Positions 2,403 through 56,822 of a DNA stretch of 64,000 nt are shown here, piece by piece. A model generated the notes under the pieces. That model worked only from the letters and a program-made list of their open reading frames with translations. It searched no databases and was not told the DNA's origin. The position numbers and the translations under genes are program-made. The DNA lies in sequence record LR756500.1, one strand, 5' to 3'. Every line of letters begins with the position of its first letter. The first letter of the stretch is position 1.

Positions 2403-2551
2403 TGAGAGAGGATGGATTTGAACCACCAAAGACTTTCGTCCGCTGATTTACTGTCAGTTGAGTTTACCAATACTCAGTTTTTCTGTAATAGCTTTAAGTT
2501 CTATTTTCATAGATATTGTAAAAGTTATAAATTGAATTTATTAACTCTCTC
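2403..2551 (-). tRNA. tRNA-Tyr(GUA)-like gene interrupted by ~65-nt element (about 2478-2542) between acceptor and D stem
   Basis: Acceptor halves GAGAGAG / CTCTCTC are 149 nt apart; loop CAGTAAA (A33), variable arm GAC-GAAA-GTC. Confidence 0.75.
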
Positions 2552-3558: not shown

Positions 3559-3639
3559 TGGTGGAGGAAATGGGGTTCGAATCCCATGAAACCTCTTGAT
3601 TGCAAATCAAGTACTCTAGCCAGACTGAGCTATACCCCC
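3559..3639 (-). tRNA. tRNA-Ala(UGC)
   Basis: Anticodon arm CTTGA-TTTGCAA-TCAAG, G3:U70, encoded CCA. Confidence 0.9.
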
Positions 3640-8542: not shown

Positions 8543-10228
8543 TTATTTTTTATTAATTAAAAAAACTTGTGTTCCATTATTAACAACAATTCCAGCATTA
8601 GAATTGAAAACTTGTGACATTTCATCTACTAAATCACATTCATATTTTGCAATAGGATAAAAATCTTTTGCTCTTAAAAAGGTTAAATTATCATCTTCTG
8701 GTAAAATAATATAGCCATTATCTTTATTATAACCGAAATTTCTAAGATTATCATATGAATCATCAGATAATATTGCATCAAGTCCGTTTATAACAAATAA
8801 TGAAAACCTTTCTTTATCATCCTCGATAAAATGTGCTATACCAACATTACCTTTTTGATAAATATCTTTAAGAGGCAATGGAAAACTAACAGTATTTAAA
8901 ATATCATGCGATTGATAATAAATAAAATTTTTGCCATTTATTCTTTGGATTAATCCATTTAAATTTGAATATCCTTTTCCATATGTTGGAATAAGAGTTG
9001 TTTGAATATAATTATTTAAAATACCATCTAAATTTATTTGATATCTATTATCATTTGTTATTACTATCAAAGTATTATCTATTTGATAGTGAGTAATTAT
9101 TTCAGTTGGTTGAAATCCTTGTATAAGAATATTTTGTTTACGATTTAAATCAATTTTATAAAGTAATTTATCAATAAATATTATCACATTTTTATCTGTG
9201 GGAAATATTCCTCTAAAACCCGAGGGCTTACTTAGTGTATAAACCGGTTTAGCATGTCCCTTATATGTAAGGTCATATATATGGATATTTGCATCCTCTA
9301 AGATGCATCCGAATACATTACTACATGCCATATATTCTATATTTCCTTTAAAAATTTCTTTCATGACAAGTTCGCCTTTTGTAATACTAGTAGGCTTATG
9401 TGTTTTAATTTTTGTAATTATTTTAGTAGTAGGATTTAAATTTAATAAAAAGCGTTCTCCTTCATTAAATATTCTTTCAAATTGATTTAATAAGTTTTGA
9501 TCTGTTATAGGTTCATAACATTTAGGTATTTTTAAATTTGGATCATTTTTAAGTATGCTTAATTTATAAATCATTCTATCTTGAATATCTTTATATTTTT
9601 GATGTATACCTTTATATGGATGTACAGTTGTAATTAAATTAAATATTACAACTGCTAATGAAAAATAATCAGCATTTTTAGAAATTTCTCCATTATGATA
9701 AAAATCTCTAATATCATGTAAAAGTCTTCCCGAGTGTTTATTACCAGGTGTTTCATAGCTATCAACGTCTATAAATGCTATATCGCCATTTTTATGAGCT
9801 AATATATTAAATCCACTAAAATCACCAATCACGATGTTTAAAGAATGAATATAATTTAAACATGTAATTAATTTTTGAGACACAGATAATTTCCAAGATT
9901 CTGTTAAATTATTTCTTTGACAATAATTACTATTAAATGCTGAATGTAAAGGAAAAAAATCTGATGGAACCATATCCATTATAAATCCAATAATATCTTT
10001 ACTTGCTTGATGCGATATTAATAAAGCTTTAGGTTTTATAAATTCTTTTGCATTAATAGCATTAAGACTATTAAATTTTTGATCAGTAATCGGTTCAATT
10101 CCTTGAAGATATAATTTTGCAACTAAACCATGTCCAATTTCAATAATGCGGCCTTCACCACCTCTAGATAATTCTTTCTTTTCATCTATAGTAATTTTTT
10201 TACTAGATGCTTTATCATATACTATCAT
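8543..10228 (-). CDS. Ser/Thr protein kinase-like protein (TerY-triad kinase)
   Basis: RGGEG glycine loop, VAKLY, GDFSGFNIL catalytic loop, IDVDS, DYFSLAV. Confidence 0.75.
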   Translation of the reverse strand: MIVYDKASSKKITIDEKKELSRGGEGRIIEIGHGLVAKLYLQGIEPITDQKFNSLNAINAKEFIKPKALLISHQASKDIIGFIMDMVPSDFFPLHSAFNSNYCQRNNLTESWKLSVSQKLITCLNYIHSLNIVIGDFSGFNILAHKNGDIAFIDVDSYETPGNKHSGRLLHDIRDFYHNGEISKNADYFSLAVVIFNLITTVHPYKGIHQKYKDIQDRMIYKLSILKNDPNLKIPKCYEPITDQNLLNQFERIFNEGERFLLNLNPTTKIITKIKTHKPTSITKGELVMKEIFKGNIEYMACSNVFGCILEDANIHIYDLTYKGHAKPVYTLSKPSGFRGIFPTDKNVIIFIDKLLYKIDLNRKQNILIQGFQPTEIITHYQIDNTLIVITNDNRYQINLDGILNNYIQTTLIPTYGKGYSNLNGLIQRINGKNFIYYQSHDILNTVSFPLPLKDIYQKGNVGIAHFIEDDKERFSLFVINGLDAILSDDSYDNLRNFGYNKDNGYIILPEDDNLTFLRAKDFYPIAKYECDLVDEMSQVFNSNAGIVVNNGTQVFLINKK

Positions 10229-15853: not shown

Positions 15854-16714
15854 TTACAAATTCCTAAATAATACTGGACGTTCTATAATTATAGGTATAT
15901 GCCGTTTAAATTCAGATTTAATATGTCTATTAATAACTAAATGATCTTTATAAATAGATTTTTCTTTATTTACAATATAATCGTAAAGTATTTTATCAGC
16001 TTCTTGATAACTAGATGCACCTATTTGTTCTAAATCACTGTTACTAATTCCTAGCCCATCAGTTGGAACAGCATTAATACATTCTTGAAGAGCTAATTTA
16101 ACTTTACCTTCTAATTCATTATCAACTATATATTGTGATAATTTATAAACTTCAGTTTTCCAAAGCATTTGTATTTGTGCATAATCTCCTTGGTCGCCAC
16201 AGATCGTCCAAAACCCTAATAAATATTCAGTGTAATTATCAGTTGACATTACCATACCTTTATTCTTAGATGCTAAATTATAAAGATAAATCATTCTTAA
16301 TCTAGCTTTAATATTTCCTAATCTTATTTTTTTACCATTTAATGTATTATCAACAATTGGATCAACAATGTCATCAAAGTATTCTATATCATCATAATCT
16401 TCAGATAAATCTAAATGGTTAAAATCAGTACAGAAATTTTTACCAATATTCATAGATCTATTTATTTCATCTACTTTATTAGTTTTAATTGTTAAACTTC
16501 GTCCTATAATAGGAATATTTAATTCATCACATATAGGTTTAGATATTGCTGCAATTAATGCACTATCAATTCCACCTGAAATTCCTAATACAATTGATTT
16601 TAAATTATTGTTTAATAAATATTGTTTTAATTCATTTCTTAAATTTGTAATTACTAAATTGCATTCCTCTTTAGTATTAAGTAATGATACTGGATCGTTA
16701 GAAATATATTTCAT
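15854..16714 (-). CDS. nadE: NH3-dependent NAD+ synthetase
   Basis: LGISGGIDS, GNIKARLRM, TDNYTE, GFWTICGD, PTDGL. Confidence 0.9.
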   Translation of the reverse strand: MKYISNDPVSLLNTKEECNLVITNLRNELKQYLLNNNLKSIVLGISGGIDSALIAAISKPICDELNIPIIGRSLTIKTNKVDEINRSMNIGKNFCTDFNHLDLSEDYDDIEYFDDIVDPIVDNTLNGKKIRLGNIKARLRMIYLYNLASKNKGMVMSTDNYTEYLLGFWTICGDQGDYAQIQMLWKTEVYKLSQYIVDNELEGKVKLALQECINAVPTDGLGISNSDLEQIGASSYQEADKILYDYIVNKEKSIYKDHLVINRHIKSEFKRHIPIIIERPVLFRNL

Positions 16715-17203: not shown

Positions 17204-17653
17204 TTAAAATATTTCAAATTTTATTCCAGATATTTTTAAAAGTTCATCTGTTTCTTTTGTATATCCTGATTTATCATACGGACGTTCATATATAACTCTA
17301 GTAATACCAGCAGCTATTAAATGTTTTAAACAATTATGACAAGGTTGATGAGTACAATATAAAGTAGTATTTGATGTTTCTTTTCCTTCTTTAGAAGCAA
17401 ATAAAATACTATTCATTTCAGCATGAACCTCAAATAAATTGGACCATTCATGATGATCTTCTCTGTTAAATTCACCTATAAACTTTTCATTACAATTAAT
17501 AAATCCAGGAGGTGAACCATTATATCCAGTTGATATTATTCTATTACTTTTAACTAAAACTGCACCTACATGATAACTTACACAATTAGACTGTTCTGAT
17601 ATTCTTTGAGCTATATCTAAGAACATCTTATCTATTTTTTTATGTTTATCCAT
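17204..17653 (-). CDS. dCMP deaminase
   Basis: VGAVLV, TGYNG, HAEMN, PCHNC zinc motifs. Confidence 0.9.
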   Translation of the reverse strand: MDKHKKIDKMFLDIAQRISEQSNCVSYHVGAVLVKSNRIISTGYNGSPPGFINCNEKFIGEFNREDHHEWSNLFEVHAEMNSILFASKEGKETSNTTLYCTHQPCHNCLKHLIAAGITRVIYERPYDKSGYTKETDELLKISGIKFEIF

Positions 17654-19896: not shown

Positions 19897-20457
19897 TTAC
19901 ATTAATTGGGTAATATATTTAGATGGAACATTATCAGTTAAATAAACATCATTTAAAGTTTTATAAAAAACAATATTATCTTTAACCATTGATTTACAAT
20001 CAATTAATAAAATTACTCCACCATTTTTTTTATCATGTCTAGCTCCGGTTTCTAAAGCCTTTTGTATGTGTTCTTCTCCATATAAATGAACATGATGTCT
20101 TGTCATTTTATTAAGACCTTCTTTTTTAATTTGTGATAATAAACGAAATCCTGTTCCATGATACAATTTTGTAGGAGGTATAACCTTTTCAAAATCATTT
20201 TTAATATTAATAGAATGACCTTGATTAGCTTTAATCATAGTTTTATTTTCATTAAAACGAAATCTTTGTTTAGGACATGTTTCTACTATATTAATAATAT
20301 CATCTACGGTAAAATCTTCTCGCTCACTTGCCTTAGATATAATTTCATCAACGTTAGCCCATCCATATTCATCTAATTTAAGATCAATAGTTTCAGGTCT
20401 ATGCCTTAAAACATAAGTTAAAAATTTACTTATTTTATTTTTTTTGTTTGAATCCAT
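19897..20457 (-). CDS. kptA: RNA 2'-phosphotransferase Tpt1/KptA
   Basis: LRHRP, LDEYGWA, KQRF, ANQGHS, LYHGT, RHHVHL, VYLTD. Confidence 0.9.
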   Translation of the reverse strand: MDSNKKNKISKFLTYVLRHRPETIDLKLDEYGWANVDEIISKASEREDFTVDDIINIVETCPKQRFRFNENKTMIKANQGHSINIKNDFEKVIPPTKLYHGTGFRLLSQIKKEGLNKMTRHHVHLYGEEHIQKALETGARHDKKNGGVILLIDCKSMVKDNIVFYKTLNDVYLTDNVPSKYITQLM

Positions 20458-21035: not shown

Positions 21036-21476
21036 TTATTTGTAAAGTTTTAATTTTCCTGTTATATTATTAATTTCTTCTTCATCAGCTGGTCCTATTG
21101 CTACACATGTTTTAGTAGGAACTCCATTAAATATAGTATCACCAGCATCTGTAATAAGTACTGTAGGAAGTTTAGCATCTTTAGCTTTATAATAAATTAA
21201 TTCTAATTCTTCTTCAGAATTACATTCTAAAACAATTTTAGTAAATTTTTCTTCCAACCATTTATCTAATGAAGAATTAATTGCATATGGAATAGTTATA
21301 ATTTTTTCATTATAAATAAAAGTTGAACCATCCTTAACTTCTTTTCTAATTCTAATATCTTTTTCACTTAAAGATAATACAGCACCTAAAGAAGCATGAG
21401 ATACTTGAGCAGCTAATTTACCAGCCGGCATATTTAAATCTTTTCTTGCTACTATTACTTGTTTTGCTTTTGACAT
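21036..21476 (-). CDS. pth2: Peptidyl-tRNA hydrolase type 2
   Basis: KQVIVARKDL, GKLAAQVSHA, TKIVL, TDAGDT, TCVAIGP. Confidence 0.9.
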   Translation of the reverse strand: MSKAKQVIVARKDLNMPAGKLAAQVSHASLGAVLSLSEKDIRIRKEVKDGSTFIYNEKIITIPYAINSSLDKWLEEKFTKIVLECNSEEELELIYYKAKDAKLPTVLITDAGDTIFNGVPTKTCVAIGPADEEEINNITGKLKLYK

Positions 21477-23203: not shown

Positions 23204-23214
23204 TAAAAAATTTG

Positions 23215-23291
23215 CGGACTTAATCAGATTCGAACTGACCTGTTTTTCCTGAGTGACAGTCAGGTGGCCACACCAAGCAACCCCTAAGTCC
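23215..23291 (-). tRNA. tRNA-Asp(GUC)
   Basis: Anticodon arm CCTGA-CTGTCAC-TCAGG, G73. Confidence 0.9.
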
Positions 23292-23292
23292 A

Positions 23293-24186
23293 TTATGCTA
23301 TAAATACCTTTTCATTATTTTTAAATACTAATTTTCTTCCTTTAATCCAACCTTTATTTATCCATTCATAAACTTCTTCTTTTTTTACTCTTATAGATTT
23401 CTTCTCTTCTAAATTATGTATCCAACACTTTCCATACTGACTATTTCTTGAACCTAATTGAGATATTTTATTTGCTTTACTTATTTTTTCTCGATGCTCT
23501 TTAGCTAATTTACGTCCTATTTGAATTCCAACTAATTCACCTGATAAATATCTTGGATCATCTACATTTACCCAAAATTTATTTCCGTCTTTATCTTTTA
23601 CACTTGTTTTATGTTTCATTATTCCAACTAATTCACTACTTAAAACTCTAGAATCATTTAAACGACATCTAATAATANNNNNNNNNNNNNNNNNNNNNAA
23701 AGAAAAATATTTACTTTGATATTGATATTCACCTGATTTTAATTTTATATTATTTACATCACATTTAAAAGAATTTCCTTCTTTATCTATAACATTGACT
23801 TTTCCTATACTTATAGGGAAATATTCATTATTATATCTTGAATCACTTTTTAACATTAATGTTTTATTATTTTTTTTATCTTTAACTAATACCAATCCTT
23901 TAGTATTCCAACCATAACCACCTAACATAATATTATAAACATCTTTTCTTTTAACAAACTCTTCATTTACTAACTCAGCCTCTTTAGCAAACATCTCTTC
24001 AAATGTATCAAAATTATAAAGAACTATACGTTCAAAATTGTCTATTCCATACTTCTTAAATGCCTTATGCAAATAAGTACCTGATCCCATATAACCATCT
24101 TCCAACTTATCCGTCTGATGACAGCCTATATAAATTTTATTGTTAATTTTATTAATAATTTCATAAACTATATTATACTTACTCAT
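23293..24186 (-). CDS. GIY-YIG (Seg-like) homing endonuclease; contains a 21-N gap at 23678-23698
   Basis: NIVYEIINKINNKIYIGCH, YMGSG, YNIMLGG, repeated VKDK motifs. Confidence 0.8.
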   Translation of the reverse strand: MSKYNIVYEIINKINNKIYIGCHQTDKLEDGYMGSGTYLHKAFKKYGIDNFERIVLYNFDTFEEMFAKEAELVNEEFVKRKDVYNIMLGGYGWNTKGLVLVKDKKNNKTLMLKSDSRYNNEYFPISIGKVNVIDKEGNSFKCDVNNIKLKSGEYQYQSKYFSXXXXXXXXIIRCRLNDSRVLSSELVGIMKHKTSVKDKDGNKFWVNVDDPRYLSGELVGIQIGRKLAKEHREKISKANKISQLGSRNSQYGKCWIHNLEEKKSIRVKKEEVYEWINKGWIKGRKLVFKNNEKVFIA

Positions 24187-24243
24187 ACCAATGATATATT
24201 TTATTTTATATATCATTAATAGTTCGAGTAAATTATTCGAGGA

Positions 24244-24381
24244 TGGCCGAGAGGGGATTCGAACCCCTGATGTTATCGTGACAAGATAAGACTTTATCCA
24301 TTTATTCTGTAATAACTTTGAGTCCTATTGAGTAGGTAATTTATAAGTTATCTGTGAACTTATTACTAAGCTACTCGGCCA
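24244..24381 (-). tRNA. tRNA-Asp(GUC)-like gene interrupted by ~66-nt element (about 24301-24366) in the D loop
   Basis: GGCCGAG-TA-GCTT-AG|insert|TGGATA-AAGT-C-TTATC-TTGTCAC-GATAA; A73. Confidence 0.8.
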
Positions 24382-24450: not shown

Positions 24451-25149
24451 TTAAATATTATATTCCTTTTTAAATTCTATTTTTTGTTTTCTATTTTGAA
24501 AATCTTTTAATATATTTAAATTTATTAAATCTTCATCTATTAAAATTTTTAATTTACAGGGAAAATTATTCCATTTTGCTAAATCTTTTAATGTAACGTA
24601 TCCTTTAATTTCAATATAAATTTTTTCATCTAATAAAAAGAAATCAGGTCTATATCTTCGAGTTTTTCCTTCATATTCATATTCAAATGTAATATAAGGC
24701 CTTTCCCATTTAATATTATTTTCATCTAAATATTTAGCATAAAGATATTCCCATTTTACTTGTAATTTTATTCCATTATATTCATAATAATTTTTTTTAG
24801 AAAAAGATGTATGCCATTCTCCATTTTTTATTCTTTCATTTATTTTATCAGATATTTTTTGTTTATGTTCTTTTGTTAATTCTGTATTTTTAGAATGATG
24901 TTTAAATAATCCTTCTTTTAAATGTTTCGTTAATGTTTCACCACATCTTTTAACTCTTTCATCAGTATCTTTAGTTAAACCTTTATTCCAAATTATTCTA
25001 CCTTTTTTATATCCGGCATTAGGATCATGATTTCTACCTTCTCCATGCATTTTCCAAATATGTGATCCTATTCCATAAATTGAATATTCTTTATTACATA
25101 TTAAACATTTACATTTTCCGTTATCTAATTTTACATATTGTTTATCCAT
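24451..25149 (-). CDS. Homing endonuclease (zinc finger, WNKGLT repeat, PD-(D/E)xK C-terminus)
   Basis: CxxC-H, WNKGLTK, YRPDF...YIEIKG. Confidence 0.65.
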   Translation of the reverse strand: MDKQYVKLDNGKCKCLICNKEYSIYGIGSHIWKMHGEGRNHDPNAGYKKGRIIWNKGLTKDTDERVKRCGETLTKHLKEGLFKHHSKNTELTKEHKQKISDKINERIKNGEWHTSFSKKNYYEYNGIKLQVKWEYLYAKYLDENNIKWERPYITFEYEYEGKTRRYRPDFFLLDEKIYIEIKGYVTLKDLAKWNNFPCKLKILIDEDLINLNILKDFQNRKQKIEFKKEYNI

Positions 25150-31195: not shown

Positions 31196-31792
31196 TTATC
31201 TTTTTCTTTTTCTACCTACTCTAGGCAAAGTATCTAATTTATCAATTAGTTCTAGATTAAGTTTTTTAATATCTTCTGTCAAAGAACCACTTACTGTTTT
31301 ATAATAATCAGATTTAATCCATTCTTCGTAAGGAGTATTTCCTCTTATTCTATTACATTTTCTGCAGCATGATACTAAGTTATCTGGATGCGATTCTCCT
31401 TCACTCTCCCATGTTATAATATGATCAACTGTTAAAGGAACATTATCAACTCCACAATATCTACATTTATAATTATCTCTTCTATAAACTTGCCAAGATA
31501 CTATGCTTTCAATATTTCTTTGAGATTTTCTCAAAATAACATTTTGTCCTTTTCTAATTCCAGATACTTCAACATTATCTAATTGAAATAATATTTTATG
31601 CCACGTATTTATATCCGGTCTTATTACTTTAATATCATTTGAAGTTATTTCTTCATCTGGTAATTTTACAATAAAACATTCACCTTCAGGAGAACTTAAA
31701 GCTATTCCACTTATAGTATTATAAATACCTAATTTTTTAATTTCGTTTTCATTCATCATTTTAAAAATTAAATTATCTTCCTCACTCTTCAA
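31196..31792 (-). CDS. HNH endonuclease domain protein
   Basis: VYRRDNYKCRYCG, LTVDHII, NLVSCCRKCN. Confidence 0.75.
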   Translation of the reverse strand: MKSEEDNLIFKMMNENEIKKLGIYNTISGIALSSPEGECFIVKLPDEEITSNDIKVIRPDINTWHKILFQLDNVEVSGIRKGQNVILRKSQRNIESIVSWQVYRRDNYKCRYCGVDNVPLTVDHIITWESEGESHPDNLVSCCRKCNRIRGNTPYEEWIKSDYYKTVSGSLTEDIKKLNLELIDKLDTLPRVGRKRKR

Positions 31793-36304: not shown

Positions 36305-36730
36305 TTAGTTTATTACCCACTTTTCTTTAAATTGTTTTTCAGTATAATCAAAATATTTTTCTATATTATTTTTATTAATAGCTTTAACAACTTTTCCATA
36401 TACAGCAGTTGTCCAACCATTTATATGTCCTTTATTGTTAGCAATTAAATATCCTTTTGTTTCATTTACTTGTATACATAGATGAGAATCTATATATTTT
36501 CCACGTATCTTACAAAAAAGAATATCTCCTTTTTTATAACTCTTTTGTTTAATAAAAAATGTAAGTGAAGGATTATCTAATTTAGGTAACATGCTATTAC
36601 CATAACATTTCATACTGCCATATCCAAACTTATATAAATTATATCTTAATCTTTCATACTTGTTTGTTTTAATTAATTGTTCGTCAAATTCTTCTTTTAT
36701 TTTTTCTTCTTCTTTTGTTTCTTCGTTCAT
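36305..36730 (-). CDS. S24/S26 peptidase-like protein
   Basis: CYGNSMLP serine motif, KKGDILF. Confidence 0.45.
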   Translation of the reverse strand: MNEETKEEEKIKEEFDEQLIKTNKYERLRYNLYKFGYGSMKCYGNSMLPKLDNPSLTFFIKQKSYKKGDILFCKIRGKYIDSHLCIQVNETKGYLIANNKGHINGWTTAVYGKVVKAINKNNIEKYFDYTEKQFKEKWVIN

Positions 36731-37305
36731 GTTGTTATTTCTTCATAATTTTTTATATTTGCTTTTAAAAGAGTATCTGGAAATATTGTTTTTCCTAAAT
36801 AAAAATCTTCATAAGCAATTCTCATTTTATTAGCACATTCGAAAGGATATACTCCTCCTGTTCCTGTTCCTAATCCAGGACATACTATAGTTCTTAATTG
36901 TGGATTTTGTTTAGCTAAAATAAATATAGCTTTTGCTGCTAAAAATATATTAGGAGTGTTAGATAATAAACTAGGGACTCTCATTGTAGGTGCAGAAATT
37001 AGAGTAGGAAATAAAGGATATTTTGTACTTATAGTTGTTGCTTGACCTACTAATAATTCTCCATTAAATTCATTTTTTATTTTATTTTGAAGTTCATATT
37101 GAATATGCCATCCCATTTTTAAAGAATATAATAAATCTATTCCTCCATCCATAAATCCAAATGAATTAGCTGGACTAACTATAGCATCTCCTGTAAAATT
37201 AAATATATCACCTTTATATACTTCAAAATTAGAATATAATTTAAATTCTTTTTCCCATGCTTTAACTAGAACATCTTTAGTATCTACTAAAATAAATTTT
37301 GTCAT
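36727..37305 (-). CDS. Macrodomain (ADP-ribose binding/hydrolase)
   Basis: GDIF, AIVSPANSFGFMDGGID, APTMRVP, PGLGTGTG. Confidence 0.88.
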   Translation of the reverse strand: MTKFILVDTKDVLVKAWEKEFKLYSNFEVYKGDIFNFTGDAIVSPANSFGFMDGGIDLLYSLKMGWHIQYELQNKIKNEFNGELLVGQATTISTKYPLFPTLISAPTMRVPSLLSNTPNIFLAAKAIFILAKQNPQLRTIVCPGLGTGTGGVYPFECANKMRIAYEDFYLGKTIFPDTLLKANIKNYEEITT

Positions 37306-37664: not shown

Positions 37665-37934
37665 ATGATCAAATGTTTTAAAAATAAATATTATAAGTAG
37701 GCCCTAACCCTACATAATCGTCCTGACTTCCACAGTATAGAACATCTCGAAGTAAATCTTTCATTAGTAATCATATTTATCGTATGTGCCCCTATTACTA
37801 AATGATTAACGTTGAATGTTAATTACAGTTGCTTAATCCATCATAATATCCAGTTATAAATTTGGCAAAATTTTATACTGTTTGAGATTTTTTTATTATA
37901 TTGCCATAATGAAAATCAATAAAAACATTAACAG

Positions 37935-38017
37935 AGGAAGGAGTGGGATTCGAACCCACGGTACCGTAGTACGTCAGTTTTCAGGACTGAATTCATAAAC
38001 CTCTCGAACACCCTTCC
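37935..38017 (-). tRNA. tRNA-Ser(UGA)
   Basis: TCAGT-CCTGAAA-ACTGA, long variable arm GTAC-TACG-GTAC. Confidence 0.88.
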
Positions 38018-44362: not shown

Positions 44363-44845
44363 TTATTTTTCATTTTTTCTTTTCCATTTTTTAAAAGGAT
44401 TTCTAGCTAATTCCGCATTATAGTATTTTTTAGTATAACTAACTTCTTTTTCAATCCAAATAGGTTTTTCAAATTCTTCATTTTCAGATGTTAATTCAAT
44501 TTCAGCCATAATTAATCCCTCATTATCATCTTCGAAAAAATCAATTTCCCATTTCTTATCTTTATACATTAAAACAGATCTTGTTTTTTTAATTTTATTT
44601 TTACAAAATTTTTCGTATAGTTCAGAACCTTGTTTAAAAGGAATTTCATATTCAATTTCTTCTCGAGATATTCCTTTTACTTTACTTTTAATTGTCATTA
44701 ATCCAAGACTGCTATCTATTAATCTAACTCTAATAGAACACTCTGAATTTTTAGATAAATAACCTTGTTTTATTTTATATGATATATCAAAAGATACATT
44801 ATTAATAAGATCTTTGTTAACTAAAAATTTTCTTTCTATTTCCAT
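44363..44845 (-). CDS. CYTH domain protein
   Basis: MEIERKFLV, QGYL, RVR, TIK, EIEYEI, KTR, WEID, AEIEL. Confidence 0.88.
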   Translation of the reverse strand: MEIERKFLVNKDLINNVSFDISYKIKQGYLSKNSECSIRVRLIDSSLGLMTIKSKVKGISREEIEYEIPFKQGSELYEKFCKNKIKKTRSVLMYKDKKWEIDFFEDDNEGLIMAEIELTSENEEFEKPIWIEKEVSYTKKYYNAELARNPFKKWKRKNEK

Positions 44846-44919
44846 ACGTGTGTTTAAACAATTAAACCGAACTCACATAGAATTTGGTTTAATAATGGAG
44901 ATAATTCAACAATTATTTT

Positions 44920-44995
44920 TGGTTGAATGTATCGGATTTGAACCGAAGACCCTCTGCTTTTAAGGCGGATGCTCTACCAACTGAGCTAATATTCT
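44920..44995 (-). tRNA. tRNA-like gene with UAA anticodon in a class I (Lys-like) body, flanked by the permuted element
   Basis: TCCGC-CTTAAAA-GCAGA, 5-nt variable loop, two acceptor mismatches, encoded CCA. Confidence 0.65.
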
Positions 44996-45078
44996 GTAAT
45001 AATTATTAGTTCTCCATTATTTTTTATTAATTAAAATATTTATATGCAATATTAATAATAATGTTTAAATAATAAAAA

Positions 45079-45885
45079 TTACCAATATTTATAAATATCT
45101 CCATCAATTCCATCAACATGTATTTTTAGATTATATGCTTCTTCTAAAGACATTATTATTTTTTGCATATCTGCATCATAAAATCCTGCACAAGCAATAC
45201 TTCCACATTCTACAATTTTCCACCTATATTCACTAAGACATATATCTATAGTAAATGCTTTAGCCAATTGAAATATTTTAATCATTTGTTTAACATATTC
45301 AATTGCATCATTATCAACTATATCATCATAAGCAATATATGTTCCTCTTCTATAAGTACTTTGTGTAACTATTTTTCCATCTATTATCCAAAATCTTATT
45401 TCTTGAGTAATATTTTTAACAGTTGCTACTTGTAATAAAGTTTCATTTGTTATAGTCGTTTTAGGTAGTAAATTATTTTTAAAATTTGTCCATTCTTCAT
45501 ATGTAAATACTCTTCCAGTAAATACTTTACTATCTAATGTTGGTCTAATAAAATGTTTATCAGAAATCCATTCAAAATCATTTCCAAATTTAACTATTCT
45601 AGAATCATAATTAAGTAAATTTTCTTTATAATGTTTAGAATAAACATCATAATCATGATTTTTAGTTATTAGAGTGCCTGGAAACCAATTATATTGTTTT
45701 GATAATCTAGCTAGTTTTAAAGATCCAAATATAAAAACATCTTCACGATCAGTATTAAAATCTAATGTTTCTTTATCATTACTAACATTTATTAATTCAT
45801 AAGATATATTAAATCTATCTAATGTTTTAATAAGTTTATCATAACCTTCTTCTCTAAATAAATTTTTTTGTATAATATAATACAT
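45079..45885 (-). CDS. ATP-grasp domain protein (DUF4343-like)
   Basis: FIRP...KVFTG, EIRFWIIDG, FTIDI, KIVEC, AGFY. Confidence 0.65.
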   Translation of the reverse strand: MYYIIQKNLFREEGYDKLIKTLDRFNISYELINVSNDKETLDFNTDREDVFIFGSLKLARLSKQYNWFPGTLITKNHDYDVYSKHYKENLLNYDSRIVKFGNDFEWISDKHFIRPTLDSKVFTGRVFTYEEWTNFKNNLLPKTTITNETLLQVATVKNITQEIRFWIIDGKIVTQSTYRRGTYIAYDDIVDNDAIEYVKQMIKIFQLAKAFTIDICLSEYRWKIVECGSIACAGFYDADMQKIIMSLEEAYNLKIHVDGIDGDIYKYW

Positions 45886-45973
45886 TTATAGTTAAATATT
45901 ATTTTTTGAATTTTATATATCTAAATAATATAAAAAAACCTATATAAATAAATTATATAGGTTTTTTTGGGGC

Positions 45974-46114
45974 TGGAGGGAGTAGGAATTGAACCTACAA
46001 TATCAAAACCCTAAATTTTGCGTGTTTACCGTTTTTCTGTAATGACTTTGAGTTCACCTTTAAAAGATGGTATTGTAAAAGACATAATTGAATTTTTATT
46101 TTCACCATCCCTCC
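45974..46114 (-). tRNA. tRNA(UAG), Leu-like with short variable loop, interrupted by ~69-nt element (about 46032-46100) in the D loop
   Basis: GGAGGGA-TG-GTG-AA|insert|CGGTAAA-CAC-G-CAAAA-TTTAGGG-TTTTG. Confidence 0.8.
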
Positions 46115-46369: not shown

Positions 46370-46506
46370 TGGCGGGGGAATTCGGGATCGAACCGAAACT
46401 GAATGTTTTCAACACATTTGCTCTACCAATTAAGCTTTTATACTGTAATAACTTAGAGTTTCTTTTCAGACTAATTTTAAAGTTATAGATGTAAATCTAT
46501 TCCCCC
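46370..46506 (-). tRNA. tRNA(UGA) in a class I body, interrupted by ~62-nt element (about 46436-46497) after position 9
   Basis: GGGGGAA-TA|insert|GCTT-AATTGGTA-GAGC-A-AATGT-GTTGAAA-ACATT; G73 plus CCA. Confidence 0.78.
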
Positions 46507-48591: not shown

Positions 48592-48652
48592 AACTAAATT
48601 TTTTAAATTTCTAATAAGTAAATATAATAAAAATGTTTTAATTAAAAATTTG

Positions 48653-48720
48653 TAGGACTAGTGGGAGCTGAACCCACGTTATCGGTTTTAGAGACCGATT
48701 TCTAACCACTAGATAGTCCC
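48653..48720 (-). tRNA. Amber suppressor tRNA(CUA) with tRNA-Pyl-like geometry
   Basis: GGGACTA / TCTA-GTGGT-TAGA / ATCGGT-CTCTAAA-ACCGAT / AAC / GTGGG-TTCAGCT-CCCAC / TAGTCCT-A; 68 nt. Confidence 0.8.
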
Positions 48721-48725
48721 CTTTG

Positions 48726-48909
48726 TGATTGTAGAAGGACTCGAACCAACAACCCCTCACTTTCAAATTACTGACAAAAATACTATTAAGCGTCCCTAAA
48801 TTCATTTTGTTTTTATTCTATTTATTATAAATATATCATCCACTTATGCGCTATAAGCTTATATACACCTACAATAAAAATAAGACTCTAACCATTGAGC
48901 TATACAACC
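48726..48909 (-). tRNA. tRNA gene with ~112-nt insertion in the anticodon loop; anticodon unresolved
   Basis: Acceptor GGTTGTA/TACAATC, intact D and T arms, stem CTTAT/GTGAG separated by about 48764-48875. Confidence 0.7.
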
Positions 48910-49893: not shown

Positions 49894-50316
49894 TTATTTT
49901 TTTAATTTATTTTTAACTATTATTTTTAATAATTCATAATTTAAATCATTTGGATGTAATTCCATACAATTTTTCATAAAAAAACCAAAATATGATTGTT
50001 CTCCATATATATGTTTATTAAATTCTTCATTATTATTTTTAATAACGTTATTTACTAAATTAATAGTTTCTTCTTCTGATAAATATTTTGGAAGATATTT
50101 TTCAATTATACAAATTTCATTTATTGCTTGTATGGTTCCTATTGTTTCTAGATTACTTATTAATGTTCTTAGAATAAAGTTAACTTCATAATCTTTTAAT
50201 ATTTTATTAAATTGTCTATGAAACTCTCCAATAATTACTTTTAATATACTAATATATTCCTTATCTTTATTTTTGATAGCTATTTTTAAGTCATTTTTAA
50301 TTTTATTTTGAAGCAT
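49894..50316 (-). CDS. GatB/YqeY domain protein
   Basis: KIKNDLKIAIKNKDK...ILKVIIGE...EKYLPKYLSEEE. Confidence 0.65.
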   Translation of the reverse strand: MLQNKIKNDLKIAIKNKDKEYISILKVIIGEFHRQFNKILKDYEVNFILRTLISNLETIGTIQAINEICIIEKYLPKYLSEEETINLVNNVIKNNNEEFNKHIYGEQSYFGFFMKNCMELHPNDLNYELLKIIVKNKLKK

Positions 50317-51744: not shown

Positions 51745-52221
51745 TTATTTTATAAAATCATTACGTAATTGTGTTAATACTTTTCCTAATAAATTTTGAC
51801 CTGGCCATTTATTTTCTGGAATATTTACAGCATCTTCTTCTAATAATCCAATACCCCATATTTTATCATAAGGACTTGCTTCTACTAAAGTTCTAGTTTC
51901 AGTAGCAATTAATTGTTTTAATAGGTTTGGATTTTGTTCAAATTTTTCTTTATTAACATCATACATAAAATTATATGATATTTTACTCCATTTATCAGTA
52001 TCAAATCCTTTAACTTTTCTTCCTAATTTTTTATTTAAACTCGGATTAGGTTCATTTAAAATTTCATTTGCTGTTTTAGAATCATTAAAATAATTTGCTT
52101 TTTCCCACATAAAAGCTTGTTCACTATTTGAAAATTCTAAACTTTTATAATTAAATTTAACAGAATACCAATTGGAATATATTCCATTCCAAAAAAATAC
52201 ATACTTATCAGTTGTTATCAT
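51745..52221 (-). CDS. NADAR (YbiA-like) family protein
   Basis: YSNWY, SEQAFMWEKA, KKLGR, KFEQN, EASPYDKIWG, GQNLLGKVL. Confidence 0.9.
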   Translation of the reverse strand: MITTDKYVFFWNGIYSNWYSVKFNYKSLEFSNSEQAFMWEKANYFNDSKTANEILNEPNPSLNKKLGRKVKGFDTDKWSKISYNFMYDVNKEKFEQNPNLLKQLIATETRTLVEASPYDKIWGIGLLEEDAVNIPENKWPGQNLLGKVLTQLRNDFIK

Positions 52222-52243: not shown

Positions 52244-52314
52244 AGGGCCTAGAGGGATTCAAACCCCCGTAGTCAGCTTTGCAGGCTGCGACCTAATCAC
52301 TCGGACATAGGCCC
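52244..52314 (-). tRNA. tRNA-Cys(GCA)
   Basis: CAGC-CTGCAAA-GCTG, U73. Confidence 0.88.
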
Positions 52315-52321
52315 ATATCGT

Positions 52322-53278
52322 TTATCTATTAAAAAACTCTTTTTCGTTATAATACAACATACTTAATCTAGTAGCAAATGTTTTATCAGATGTACTATCT
52401 CCTATCATTATACATTGTTTAGGATCTAACATATATTTATATATTAGATCTATACCCATTCCACTTTGAGGTTTTCTACAATAACAAATTTCCTTAGGTA
52501 TACTATGAGGACAATATTTATAATCATCAATAATATTATTCATTAAAGAATTTGTTTCTTTAATTATATCTTCAACGTTATCTATAAAGTGACCTTTATT
52601 AACTCCTGATTGATTAGTTACTGCTAAAATTAAAAATCCTCTATTTTTATATTTTTGTAAAATGCTTACGGTATTTTCTAAAATATATTGATCATTTAAG
52701 TTAATTGGATATTTTTCTCCACTAACTGTTTTTCTAACAGTACCATCTAAATCAATTAATAATGCTTTATTTTTTAAATTAGTATCCCAAATTCTTTCAA
52801 ATTCTGTAATTACTAATTCATTATAATCTGTAACTTTAGGCTTTTTAAATTCTTTTGAATACTTAAATATTGCTGGAAGAACCCAAACATTTGGATTATT
52901 TTTAAATATAATAGGAATAGTATCTGTATAATTATGAAAGCTTCCTGTAATTTTTTTAATTCTAATATAAGAATTAATTAATGCATCTTCTTTAGAAGTA
53001 TTCATTAAATGAAATCCTATTGTGTGTTTATGATATTTACAATTATCTATAAATAAATATCTTGTATTTTCATTAGGAAGAGTTGCATCAATTACTATTT
53101 TCTTAACACCGTCTTTTATATGTTTTTCATGAAGTGCAGCTAAATCTATCATAGAAATATTTAAGCTATCTCTATTTAAAATTAAATATCCTAATTTTTC
53201 GTATTCTTTTGAAATACTAGATTTTCCACTTGCTGGATATCCTCCAATTAAAACAGTATCAGTATTACAAAGTTTCAT
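52322..53278 (-). CDS. Polynucleotide kinase/3'-phosphatase (P-loop kinase + HAD domain)
   Basis: GYPASGKS, VIDAT, LIDLDGT, TNQSG, CRKP, IGD. Confidence 0.75.
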   Translation of the reverse strand: MKLCNTDTVLIGGYPASGKSSISKEYEKLGYLILNRDSLNISMIDLAALHEKHIKDGVKKIVIDATLPNENTRYLFIDNCKYHKHTIGFHLMNTSKEDALINSYIRIKKITGSFHNYTDTIPIIFKNNPNVWVLPAIFKYSKEFKKPKVTDYNELVITEFERIWDTNLKNKALLIDLDGTVRKTVSGEKYPINLNDQYILENTVSILQKYKNRGFLILAVTNQSGVNKGHFIDNVEDIIKETNSLMNNIIDDYKYCPHSIPKEICYCRKPQSGMGIDLIYKYMLDPKQCIMIGDSTSDKTFATRLSMLYYNEKEFFNR

Positions 53279-55098: not shown

Positions 55099-55160
55099 AA
55101 TGATATTTTTATTTTATATATCATTATATCTAGTCTAAACCAATTACCATTATGACCTTG

Positions 55161-55242
55161 TAACGAAGGAGAGATTCGAACTCTCACGCAATTAAGCATC
55201 AGTTCCTAAGACTGACGGGTCTTACCGTTCCCCCACTTCGTC
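55161..55242 (-). tRNA. tRNA-Leu(UAG)
   Basis: TCAGT-CTTAGGA-ACTGA, long variable arm, A73. Confidence 0.9.
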
Positions 55243-56613: not shown

Positions 56614-56632
56614 ATTTACACCTAAACTTTTG

Positions 56633-56716
56633 TACTACGTATGGGATTCGAACCCATGAGTTGTTTCCAACACAACAGTGAAAGTGTTGCGACCTAAACC
56701 TCTAGTCGAACGTAGC
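56633..56716 (-). tRNA. tRNA-Glu(UUC) with long variable arm
   Basis: CAACA-CTTTCAC-TGTTG then GTTG-GAAA-CAAC. Confidence 0.85.
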
Positions 56717-56738
56717 ATTTAAATTTGGGTGGAAGATG

Positions 56739-56822
56739 GGTACCTGATAGGATTCGAACCTACGATGTTTCTAATGTATAGAGCCACAATCTATTGCCTT
56801 CGGCCGCTAGGCTACAGATACC
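56739..56822 (-). tRNA. tRNA-His(GUG) with 14-nt variable region
   Basis: G-1:C73, ATAGA-TTGTGGC-TCTAT. Confidence 0.88.

What the first reader, a model, noticed from the sequence alone, without database searches (positions are those of the whole stretch)
44890..45021. Fifth copy of the element is circularly permuted and wraps around a whole tRNA
Upstream of the UAA tRNA lies the element's 3' half (GGAGA-ACTAA-TAATTAT-TACAGAA). Downstream of its CCA lies the 5' half (ATAATTG-TTGAATTA-TCTCC). AATAATGGAGA pairs perfectly with TCTCCATTATT, TAATTAT pairs with ATAATTG, and the basal TTC/GAA pair is part of the acceptor stem. The same fold therefore forms either inside a tRNA or from its leader plus trailer. 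This parallels how archaeal BHB motifs serve both for intron removal and for release of RNA ends, and it argues that the fold is a recognised processing or binding site.
Basis: partly seen in the sequence, partly recalled or inferred. Interest (0 to 1): 0.85.

Follow-up and report, generated by a model that had tools for sequence, protein, structure and literature searches.

The report
tRNA wrapped by split intron-like module
In a 429-kb groundwater phage, a small three-helix RNA module that interrupts four tRNA genes is formed at a fifth gene by the sequences before and after the tRNA; this suggests, but does not prove, a shared cut-and-rejoin processing signal in a bacterial virus.

Summary
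tRNA(UAA) at 44920-44995 (minus strand) has a leader that is a paralogue of the 3' half of a module found in four other tRNA(-like) genes. These are copies A (24k), B (46.4k), C (2.5k) and D (46.0k). In them the module sits between nucleotide 8 and the D arm.

The trailer pairs with the leader in the same layout:
- an 11-bp helix;
- an 8 x 5 internal loop;
- a 7-bp helix;
- the conserved UACA loop;
- a GAA/UUC helix that here lies inside the acceptor stem.

This flank duplex (-19.7 kcal/mol) is the strongest of 26 tRNAs, with p about 5e-4 against random genome sites. One caveat applies: the trailer resembles the 5' halves only structurally, not by significant sequence similarity.

The motif is not an archaeal BHB, and the phage has no EndA, RtcB or RNase III. 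It does encode a Pnkp-like enzyme, an HD-kinase, two RNA ligases, Tpt1, Macro and NADAR, several of them inside the tRNA island.

Best reading (about 0.4): a phage-specific cleavage-ligation signal used in two topologies, with the endonuclease unidentified. No RNA data and no relatives carrying the module were found. A rearrangement relic, a plain RNase III stem, or a retained structural domain remain possible.

The parts
45011..45021 (-). Leader strand of the apical helix S2 (AATAATGGAGA)
   Evidence: 100% complementary to 44891-44901 (I21). Pair probability is about 0.9 in a 341-nt context.
45006..45010 (-). Leader side of the internal loop (ACTAA). It matches the conserved ACUYA loop of copies A-D.
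44999..45005 (-). Leader strand of helix S1 (TAATTAT)
   Evidence: Pairs with 44910-44916 by 6 Watson-Crick pairs plus 1 G-U. It carries two pair changes relative to the ATAACTT/AAGTTAT of copies A and B.
44994..44998 (-). Conserved TACAG. Here it spans the last three leader bases and tRNA nucleotides 1-2.
   Evidence: TACAG is invariant in all five copies. The 13-mer TTATTACAGAATA is shared exactly with copy A.
44920..44995 (-). tRNA with anticodon UAA. It has a class-I shape, discriminator A73 and an encoded CCA. Its acceptor stem contains the GAA/UUC helix (S0) of the module.
   Evidence: ARAGORN. Rfam tRNA 51.5 bits. Non-Watson-Crick pairs at 1:72 and 6:67, one in the anticodon stem and one in the T stem.
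44910..44916 (-). Trailer strand of helix S1 (ATAATTG), 3 nt after the CCA
44902..44909 (-). Trailer side of the internal loop (TTGAATTA, 8 nt). It is the same length as the 5' loop of copies A and C.
   Evidence: The MFE pairs three of its bases with the leader loop.
44891..44901 (-). Trailer strand of helix S2 (TCTCCATTATT)
   Evidence: I21
45051..45082 (-). Upstream A/T-rich arm that can pair weakly with the leader. It may be a decayed hairpin partner, or a chance match.
   Evidence: I1, 75% complementary. Duplex -12.4 kcal/mol. Its similarity to the trailer arm is not significant (P 0.28).
24245..24380 (-). Copy A: a tRNA-like gene with acceptor GGCCGAG/CTCGGCC and the module at about 24305-24358.
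   Evidence: ARAGORN calls it Ile(tat) with a 62-nt intron, or Asp(gtc) after removal of the module.
46370..46506 (-). Copy B: tRNA(UGA) with acceptor GGGGGAA/TTCCCCC, G73 and CCA. The module lies at about 46441-46493, between U8 and the D arm.
   Evidence: (Rfam tRNA positions 6-65). Its basal helix is UAC/GUA instead of UUC/GAA.
2403..2551 (-). Copy C: a class-II tRNA(GUA) with acceptor GAGAGAG/CTCTCTC and the module at about 2481-2536.
45974..46114 (-). Copy D: a tRNA-like gene (UAG) with acceptor GGAGGGA/TCCCTCC and the module at about 46035-46092.
   Evidence: (Rfam tRNA positions 9-63, 23 bits)
19897..20457 (-). RNA 2'-phosphotransferase Tpt1/KptA. It is a candidate for the last step of a heal-and-seal pathway (inferred link).
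   Evidence: PF01885, 2e-47. It aligns to PDB entry 7kw8 (titled tRNA 2'-phosphotransferase) at 8e-40.
52322..53278 (-). Pnkp-like protein with an N-terminal kinase-like part and a C-terminal PNK3P/HAD phosphatase. It is a candidate end-healing enzyme (inferred link).

Best explanation
The window lies in the tRNA island of a 429-kb, 24% G+C phage from groundwater. The phage carries a small paralogous family of five tRNA(-like) genes that share a three-helix RNA module. From base to tip the module is:
- S0, 3 bp;
- a loop with conserved UACA;
- S1, 7 bp;
- an asymmetric 8 x 5 loop with conserved ACUYA;
- S2, 3-11 bp.

In four genes the module is a hairpin inserted after U8, and it has to be taken out to give a cloverleaf. 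It therefore behaves like an intron. In the fifth gene the connectivity is turned inside out. The 3' half is the leader, the 5' half is the trailer, and S0 is part of the acceptor stem.

Most likely mechanism (inferred): the fold is the recognition site of a structure-specific endoribonuclease that is still unidentified. The phage's own end-healing and sealing enzymes then rejoin the ends. These are a Pnkp-like protein, an HD-kinase, two RNA ligases and Tpt1, with Macro and NADAR for the ADP-ribose by-products.

In the four hairpin copies this removes the insert. In the wrapped copy the same cuts would release the tRNA from the polycistronic transcript between the ATP-grasp and CYTH genes, possibly through a circular intermediate, before RNase P and 3' trimming.

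Shown: the anatomy, the covariation, the statistics of the flank pairing, and the enzyme genes. Inferred: every RNA cleavage and ligation step.
For: - Five copies share helix positions with pair changes that keep pairing. S2 differs in every copy. S1 changes in copy D and in the fifth copy. S0 is UAC/GUA in copy B.
- The loops are conserved.
- Each of copies A-D has a perfect 7-bp acceptor stem closed across the insert. They are the only such long G/C-containing cases in the genome.
- Removing the insert in silico gives ARAGORN tRNAs for all four.
- Rfam aligns the sequence after TACAG to tRNA positions 6/9-63/65 in copies A, B and D.
- The flank duplex of the fifth copy is the strongest of 26 tRNAs and rare at random sites, 4.5e-4.
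- The flank helices have no mismatch in 18 pairs, whereas the tRNA's own stems have four.
- An encoded CCA sits exactly after the pseudo-acceptor.
- Healing and sealing genes are present:
  - RNA ligase next to an HD+kinase protein;
  - a second ligase;
  - inside the island, Tpt1, a Pnkp-like protein, Macro and NADAR.
- Unexplained introns in huge-phage tRNAs are on record (doi 10.1101/356790).
Against: - No RNA evidence exists. Only groundwater DNA runs hold the sequence.
- No endonuclease candidate was found. There is no EndA, RtcB or RNase III, and Pfam scans of about 70 island ORFs showed none.
- The repair enzymes are usually read as a defence against host anticodon nucleases (PMC9503650), so they are not specific evidence for splicing.
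- No 2H phosphoesterase that would make 2'-phosphate ends was found in the phage.
- The helices are A/U-rich and weak. RNAalifold predicts nothing on the four copies, and S1 has low ensemble probability in the fifth copy.
- The distance from U8 to the module varies from 5 to 14 nt, so the 5' cut site is undefined.
- No other genome was found with the module, so covariation rests on five paralogues.
Confidence: 0.4

Rival explanations
1. Rearrangement relic. The fifth locus is a by-product of local duplication and deletion among tandem module-bearing tRNA genes, in an island full of homing endonucleases. Leader and trailer are complementary only because they descend from the two arms of the same hairpin in neighbouring duplicates. 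The tRNA is a decaying pseudo-tRNA and the wrap has no function.
For: - Copies B, D and the fifth copy lie within 1.7 kb.
- Copy B and the fifth copy are clear paralogues.
- The fifth tRNA has four non-Watson-Crick pairs and an A/U-rich pseudo-acceptor.
- Homing endonuclease genes flank copy A, and an HNH gene lies nearby.
- A weak upstream arm could be the leader's decayed former partner.
- In a relative, repeated spacer hairpins flanking a tRNA also give a strong leader-trailer duplex.
Against: - It needs several independent deletions that happen to leave the tRNA in register. There are exactly 3 nt between the T stem and UUC, 9 nt between TAC and the D stem, and a CCA in the right place.
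- The flank helices show no decay (0 mismatches in 18 pairs) while the tRNA stems do.
- The similarity of the upstream arm is not significant.
Confidence: 0.25
2. Generic double-strand processing stem. The leader-trailer duplex, two 11-bp segments around a small internal loop, is simply a host RNase III or stabilising stem. It would excise the tRNA from the mRNA in the way the stems around rRNAs do, independently of what the module does in the other four genes.
For: - The MFE gives 11 + 11 bp separated by a 2 x 5 loop.
- The tRNA lies between two protein genes on one strand, with no promoter or terminator signal of its own.
Against: - The leader is a paralogue of the module's 3' half, with its conserved loops.
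- The hairpin versions have only 7 + 3-5 bp and are poor RNase III substrates. Cutting them would sever the tRNA.
- The phage has no RNase III of its own, and the host is unknown.
Confidence: 0.15
3. Retained functional domain. The module is not removed. The five RNAs are tRNA-like small RNAs whose conserved extra domain binds a protein or is catalytic. The permutation reflects selection on three-dimensional structure, as in permuted ribozymes and two-piece tmRNA.
For: - Copies A and D have degenerate D and anticodon arms but perfect acceptor and T arms.
- The loop sequences are more conserved than a discarded insert would need.
- Natural circular permutation is typical of structured functional RNAs (general knowledge).
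Against: - Copies B and C give canonical cloverleaves with the usual conserved nucleotides once the insert is removed, and their discriminator bases fit their anticodons.
- There is no match to any Rfam ribozyme or Y-RNA-like family, even at E up to 10.
Confidence: 0.12
4. DNA-level mobile element. The module is a miniature palindromic transposable element of the IS200/IS605 or REP kind that has landed in tRNA genes, and the inverted 11-mers are its ends.
For: - The genome holds six to seven TnpB genes.
- The element is a hairpin followed by a conserved short motif at a fixed distance, which resembles HUH-nuclease recognition logic (general knowledge).
Against: - There is no Y1 transposase.
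- There is no similarity between the module and the TnpB loci.
- All copies lie in tRNA genes, on the transcribed strand, at the same tRNA position, with compensatory changes that fit RNA pairing including G-U.
Confidence: 0.05

Closest known systems
Archaeal bulge-helix-bulge (BHB) processing of tRNA introns and of rRNA/permuted-tRNA flanks
   Same: One RNA fold is used in two topologies: inside a tRNA as an intron, and formed by leader plus trailer to release an RNA, there through circular intermediates (PMC3978253, PMC7714728).
   Different: The motif here is not two 3-nt bulges around a 4-bp helix. No EndA or RtcB is encoded. The insert sits after nucleotide 8. The organism is a bacteriophage.
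Enigmatic tRNA introns of Lak megaphages (Devoto et al. 2019)
   Same: Huge-phage tRNA genes are oversized because of inserted sequences of unknown splicing mechanism.
   Different: Here the inserts form one conserved structural family at one unusual position, and one member is turned inside out around a tRNA. No module of this sequence was found in other viral or metagenome contigs.
Circularly permuted tRNA genes of Cyanidioschyzon merolae and some Archaea
   Same: The leader and trailer of the precursor pair to form the processing motif.
   Different: There the tRNA halves are swapped. Here the tRNA is colinear and the module is what is permuted.
Phage and bacterial RNA repair cassettes (Pnkp/HD-Pnk + RNA ligase + Tpt1/KptA, Macro, NADAR)
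   Same: The same enzyme set is encoded, partly inside the tRNA island. Its presence in jumbo phages is known.
   Different: These cassettes are known as a repair system against host tRNA nucleases. A role in removing phage tRNA inserts is my inference and has not been described.
RNase III processing stems around rRNA and in phage T7 transcripts
   Same: A long, interrupted duplex is made from sequences flanking a stable RNA.
   Different: One arm is a paralogue of an intron-like module with conserved loops. The other copies are too short for RNase III.

Membership tests
Archaeal/eukaryal BHB-EndA tRNA splicing | Helix-bulge-helix-bulge-helix: two 3-nt bulges on opposite strands separated by 4 bp | tested here: not met
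   The loops are two-sided internal loops (8 x 5, or 5 x 2 in the MFE; about 4 x 4-8) separated by 7-11 bp.
Archaeal/eukaryal BHB-EndA tRNA splicing | A splicing endonuclease of the EndA/Sen family is available | tested here: not met
   PF01974 has no match in the 96%-complete phage record while the controls respond. The host genome is unknown.
Archaeal/eukaryal BHB-EndA tRNA splicing | Ligation by RtcB, or by a heal-and-seal ligase with Tpt1 | tested here: inconclusive
   There is no RtcB. Two PF09414 ligases, an HD+kinase protein, a Pnkp-like protein and Tpt1 are present. No 2H esterase was found. Activity on these RNAs is untested.
Circularly permuted tRNA gene | The 3' part of the tRNA is encoded upstream of the 5' part | tested here: not met
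   ARAGORN and Rfam read a colinear tRNA over positions 1-71.
Circularly permuted tRNA gene | A circular RNA intermediate | not testable with these tools
   No RNA runs hold the locus.
Protein-spliced or unexplained phage tRNA introns (Lak-type) | A phage tRNA gene enlarged by an insert whose removal restores a cloverleaf | tested here: met
   Met for copies A-D. The fifth copy has no insert. It carries the module in its flanks.
Group I self-splicing tRNA intron | A P1-P9 catalytic core, usually more than 200 nt, in the anticodon loop | tested here: not met
   The inserts are about 60-85 nt and lie after nucleotide 8. There is no Rfam intron match at E up to 10.
Known self-cleaving ribozymes (hammerhead, twister, pistol, hatchet, hairpin, HDV-like) | A match to the family covariance model | tested here: not met
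   No such hits in the gathering scan or in the E<=10 scans.
RNase III processing stem | About two turns of duplex RNA formed by flanking sequences | tested here: inconclusive
   There are 11 + 11 bp with a small internal loop in the fifth copy. Cleavage is untestable here, and the other copies are too short.
IS200/IS605-type miniature element (PATE/REP) | A cognate Y1/HUH transposase, and ends similar to those of the autonomous elements | tested here: not met
   There is no PF01797 match. TnpB genes are present, but their loci show no similarity to the module.

The most novel reading that the evidence does not exclude
A bacteriophage has its own protein-dependent tRNA splicing and processing system. 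It is built on a new RNA motif, analogous in function to BHB but unrelated to it. The motif works both as an intron after nucleotide 8 and, turned inside out, as an end-release signal around a whole tRNA, possibly through circular tRNA precursors. Ligation would be done by the phage's Pnkp/HD-Pnk, RNA ligase and Tpt1. This would give phage-encoded Tpt1 a defined physiological substrate in a bacterial setting.
Probability: 0.2. Interest if true: 0.85.

Novelty: new variant of a known kind. Interest (0 to 1): 0.6.

Why it matters
Enzyme-spliced tRNA introns are regarded as a feature of archaea and eukaryotes. Bacteria and phages are known for self-splicing group I introns, and the short inserts reported in huge-phage tRNAs remain unexplained.

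A conserved fold that occurs both inside tRNAs and wrapped around one gives a concrete, mutable RNA signal to test. It lies in a genome that also supplies kinase/phosphatase, ligase and 2'-phosphotransferase genes. If it is processed, several things would follow:
- it would define a new splicing motif;
- it would point to an unknown endonuclease;
- it would offer a natural substrate for bacterial-type Tpt1;
- it would show that phages can gate tRNA supply through their own RNA-processing enzymes.

If it is a relic, it still documents how intron-like modules and tRNA genes are reshuffled in phage tRNA islands.

Tried and rejected
- **RNA evidence.** Only groundwater DNA runs hold the locus. Laying their contigs at 80% likeness gave only unrelated organisms' tRNA bodies and spurious joints. 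There was no insert-free allele.
- **Relatives.** The neighbouring ATP-grasp gene found loci at about 60% identity. They have dozens of tRNAs and oversized tRNA-like genes, but inserts at other positions, no module and no synteny.
- **Pattern scans.** Scans of viral and metagenome contigs returned coding-sequence chance hits or the genome itself.
- **Structure prediction.** RNAalifold on the four hairpin copies predicted no structure, because the helices are weak and A/U-rich and MAFFT misaligned S2.
- **Profile searches.** Profile HMMs of the two halves did not recover the fifth copy. The leader ranked 18th at E = 26 and the trailer was absent.
- **Known RNA families.** Known ribozymes, group I introns and Y-RNA-like families were rejected.
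- **Mobile DNA.** An IS605-type element was rejected.
- **Spliceosome-like motifs.** The resemblance of ACUAA...UUAUUACAG to a branch site plus 3' splice site was judged coincidental. There is no consistent 5' site, and this is a phage.
- **Hairpin-ribozyme loop B.** The resemblance of UAUUAC was rejected because the partner strand is absent in most copies.
- **Stop-codon recoding.** Recoding by the CUA tRNA was rejected. Opening TAG or TGA hardly changes ORF coverage.
- **Endonuclease search.** No candidate emerged from Pfam or PHROG scans of about 70 island ORFs.

Full report
**Setting**

- The window is positions 324,729-388,728 of a single 429,198-bp virus record with 24% G+C, estimated 96% complete, from groundwater.
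- All of its roughly 30 tRNA genes and a tmRNA lie in this window on the minus strand, interspersed with protein genes of the same orientation.
- The finding concerns the tRNA at 44920-44995. It lies in the 233-nt gap between an R2K ATP-grasp gene (45079-45885) and a CYTH-domain gene (44363-44845).

**The observation**

Read on the minus strand, the locus has this order:
- AATAATGGAGA, ACTAA, TAATTAT, TAC;
- a 76-nt tRNA ending in ACCA;
- AAA, ATAATTG, TTGAATTA, TCTCCATTATT.

- The two 11-mers are perfectly complementary (I21).
- The two 7-mers pair with six Watson-Crick pairs and one G-U.
- G2-A3-A4 pairs with U69-U70-C71 in the acceptor stem.

RNAfold puts both flank helices in the minimum-energy structure, with a z-score of -3.8. 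In a 341-nt context the 11-bp helix has pair probabilities near 0.9. The inner helix is in the MFE, extended there to 11 bp, but competes with local alternatives and has a probability of about 0.08.

The flank duplex of -19.7 kcal/mol is the strongest among the 26 ARAGORN tRNAs. The only near rival arises from neighbouring tRNA sequence. Only 9 of 20,000 random genome sites with the same spacing reach this energy. That corresponds to roughly 0.01 after allowing for about 30 tRNAs.

**The other copies**

Short-word BLAST and pattern searches located four hairpin copies, all on the minus strand:
- A at 24245-24380;
- B at 46370-46506;
- C at 2403-2551;
- D at 45974-46114.

Each has a perfect 7-bp G/C-containing acceptor stem whose 5' strand lies 60-85 nt upstream of the tRNA body. 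These are the only such long G/C-containing cases in the genome.

After the 5' acceptor strand and U8 the order is:
- 5-14 variable nucleotides;
- a 3-bp helix S0 (UUC/GAA, or UAC/GUA in B);
- a loop with invariant UACA on its 3' side;
- S1 (ATAACTT/AAGTTAT and variants);
- an 8 x 5 internal loop with conserved ACUYA;
- S2, which differs in every copy (CCUA/UAGG, UCU/AGA, UCUAU/AUAGA, UACC/GGUG);
- an apical loop.

The D arm then begins 8-10 nt after TAC, and 9 nt after it in B and in the fifth copy.

Two tests support reading the inserts as removable:
- Rfam aligns the sequence following TACAG to tRNA positions 6/9-63/65 in A, B and D.
- Deleting the insert in silico makes ARAGORN call tRNAs for all four: B UGA, C GUA class II, D UAG, and A GUC or, by another reading, UAU.

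**How the fifth copy relates to them**

- Its leader is a true paralogue of the module's 3' half. It shares the exact 13-mer TTATTACAGAATA with copy A.
- It aligns without gaps with copy B from the ACU loop through TACAG, the D arm and the T arm.
- Its trailer pairs with that leader in the same order of helices, with the same 8-nt and 5-nt loop lengths.
- Relative to copies A and B, S1 carries two pair changes (C-G to U-A, and U-A to G-U). S2 is entirely different and longer.
- S0 is now three pairs of the acceptor stem. The discriminator and CCA lie in the loop opposite UACA.

The connectivity is therefore that of the module opened at its tip and closed through the tRNA.

The caveat is that the trailer cannot be shown to be homologous by sequence. 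A profile of the 5' halves does not find it, and local alignments to the four 5' halves give P of 0.07-0.95 against random genome segments. The assignment rests on complementarity and layout.

An upstream A/T-rich arm (45051-45082) can also pair weakly with the leader, at -12.4 kcal/mol. Its similarity to the trailer is not significant.

**The tRNA itself**

- It scores 51.5 bits with the Rfam tRNA model. It has A73 and an encoded CCA.
- Its anticodon is UAA, which reads UUA. It is not a suppressor.
- It has a class-I shape, and four of its stem pairs are non-Watson-Crick.
- The flank helices have none in 18 pairs. At the mismatch rate of the tRNA's own stems, that would be expected about 2% of the time. 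This argues weakly for selection on the wrap.

**What the module is not**

- It is not a BHB motif, and the phage has no EndA or RtcB.
- It matches no Rfam ribozyme, intron or Y-RNA-like family, even at E up to 10.
- The phage has no RNase III.
- Six to seven TnpB genes exist elsewhere in the genome, but there is no Y1 transposase and no similarity between their loci and the module.

**Enzymes**

Elsewhere in the genome:
- an RNA ligase (PF09414) lies next to an HD-plus-polynucleotide-kinase protein whose kinase part resembles the Clostridium thermocellum Pnkp kinase;
- there is a second ligase.

Inside the tRNA island:
- Tpt1/KptA RNA 2'-phosphotransferase (19897-20457);
- a kinase-plus-PNK3P phosphatase protein (52322-53278);
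- NADAR (51745-52221) and Macro (36727-37305);
- NAD synthase, PTH2 peptidyl-tRNA hydrolase and a deaminase.

No 2H phosphoesterase was found. Such sets are known in jumbo phages and are usually read as repair of tRNAs cut by host nucleases (PMC9503650). They show that the phage can heal and seal cyclic-phosphate and 5'-OH ends and remove a junction 2'-phosphate. They do not show that it splices.

**Interpretation**

The best-supported reading is that the module is a recognised RNA fold serving cleavage and rejoining. In copies A-D it acts like an intron. In the fifth gene it acts as an end-release signal, possibly with a circular intermediate. The cutting enzyme is unknown. Confidence is about 0.4.

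The rivals are:
- a rearrangement relic in an island rich in homing endonucleases, 0.25;
- a generic RNase III or stability stem, 0.15;
- a retained functional domain of tRNA-like RNAs, 0.12;
- a DNA-level mobile element, 0.05.

**Comparative and expression data**

- No RNA run holds the locus.
- Contigs from the groundwater DNA runs showed no insert-free allele.
- Relatives at about 60% protein identity carry many odd, oversized tRNA-like genes, but not this module and not this gene order.
- Scans of viral and metagenome collections returned only chance hits or the genome itself.
- Covariation therefore rests on five paralogues in one genome.

**Comparison with what is known**

- Unexplained introns in huge-phage tRNAs were reported for Lak megaphages.
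- Using one motif both for introns and for flank processing is the archaeal BHB logic, which is also used by permuted tRNA genes.

This case shares the logic but fails the defining features of those families. It differs in motif, in position and in being found in a bacteriophage. I rate it a new variant of a known kind, of real but unproven interest.

Noticed in passing
window 48725-48909 (-) and 48652-48720 (-): A tRNA-like gene with acceptor GGTTGTA/TACAATC carries a 112-nt insert in its anticodon loop and lacks the TACAG module. Depending on the junction its anticodon is UUA or UGA. Five nucleotides downstream lies a 69-nt tRNA with anticodon CUA. Opening TAG or TGA hardly changes ORF coverage anywhere in the genome, so no recoding is evident.
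   Followed up: partly
window 19897-20457, 52322-53278, 51745-52221, 36727-37305, 15854-16714, 21036-21476, 17204-17653, 49894-50316 (all -): The tRNA island also encodes Tpt1/KptA, a Pnkp-like kinase-phosphatase, NADAR, Macro, NAD synthase, PTH2 peptidyl-tRNA hydrolase, a cytidine/tRNA-type deaminase and a YqeY/GatB-like protein. The Tpt1 has Lys where the aligned structure 7kw8 has Arg, in the IRANQGHS motif.
   Followed up: partly
window 44920-44995, 46370-46506, 45974-46114, 2403-2551 versus 2203-2286, 37934-38017, 55160-55242, 673-753: At least four of the five module-bearing tRNAs (the fifth copy, B, C and D) repeat the anticodon of a conventional tRNA in the same genome: UAA, UGA, UAG and GUA. 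Copy A repeats GUC only under one of its two readings. Three of them have a class-I shape although Leu and Ser tRNAs are normally class II. Relatives also have 75-nt 'Leu/Ser' tRNAs.
   Followed up: partly
window 23293-24216, 24451-25149, 31196-31759 (all -): Free-standing homing-endonuclease-like genes sit among the tRNAs. A GIY-YIG type (phrog_314, 6e-37) lies directly downstream of copy A, another endonuclease-like ORF lies upstream of it, and there is an HNH gene.
   Followed up: partly
G000:C1 around 25.2k, 38.2k, 131.3k, 137.0k, 152.0k, 185.0k and 233.6k (loci L147-L153): There are six to seven TnpB (Cas12f-like) genes, two pairs of them 93-95% identical. No Y1 transposase is present in the phage genome.
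   Followed up: partly
window 56632-56716, 56738-56821, 3559-3639, 23214-23291 (-): The Glu, His, Ala and Asp tRNAs have unusually long variable regions, giving lengths of 78-85 nt.
   Followed up: no
window 52244-52314 (-): A tRNA with anticodon GCA (Cys) is found by Rfam (46.6 bits) but missed by ARAGORN. It lies between the Pnkp-like and NADAR genes.
   Followed up: no
L003:3060-3203; L001:3328-3454, 10026-10149; L003:2195-2329: Related phages carry oversized tRNA-like genes with inserts in the anticodon or variable region. One tRNA-Val is flanked by direct copies of a G/C-rich spacer hairpin, which by itself gives a strong leader-trailer duplex.
   Followed up: partly
window about 45930-45967 (-): An A/T-rich perfect hairpin followed by a T run, directly after copy D, looks like an intrinsic terminator. 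The scan missed it because it requires G-C pairs.
   Followed up: no
L026:246-275, L027:2167-2196: An unrelated phage (35% G+C) has a tRNA gene with an insert of about 50 nt in the anticodon region. Insert-bearing tRNAs are therefore not confined to this clade.
   Followed up: no
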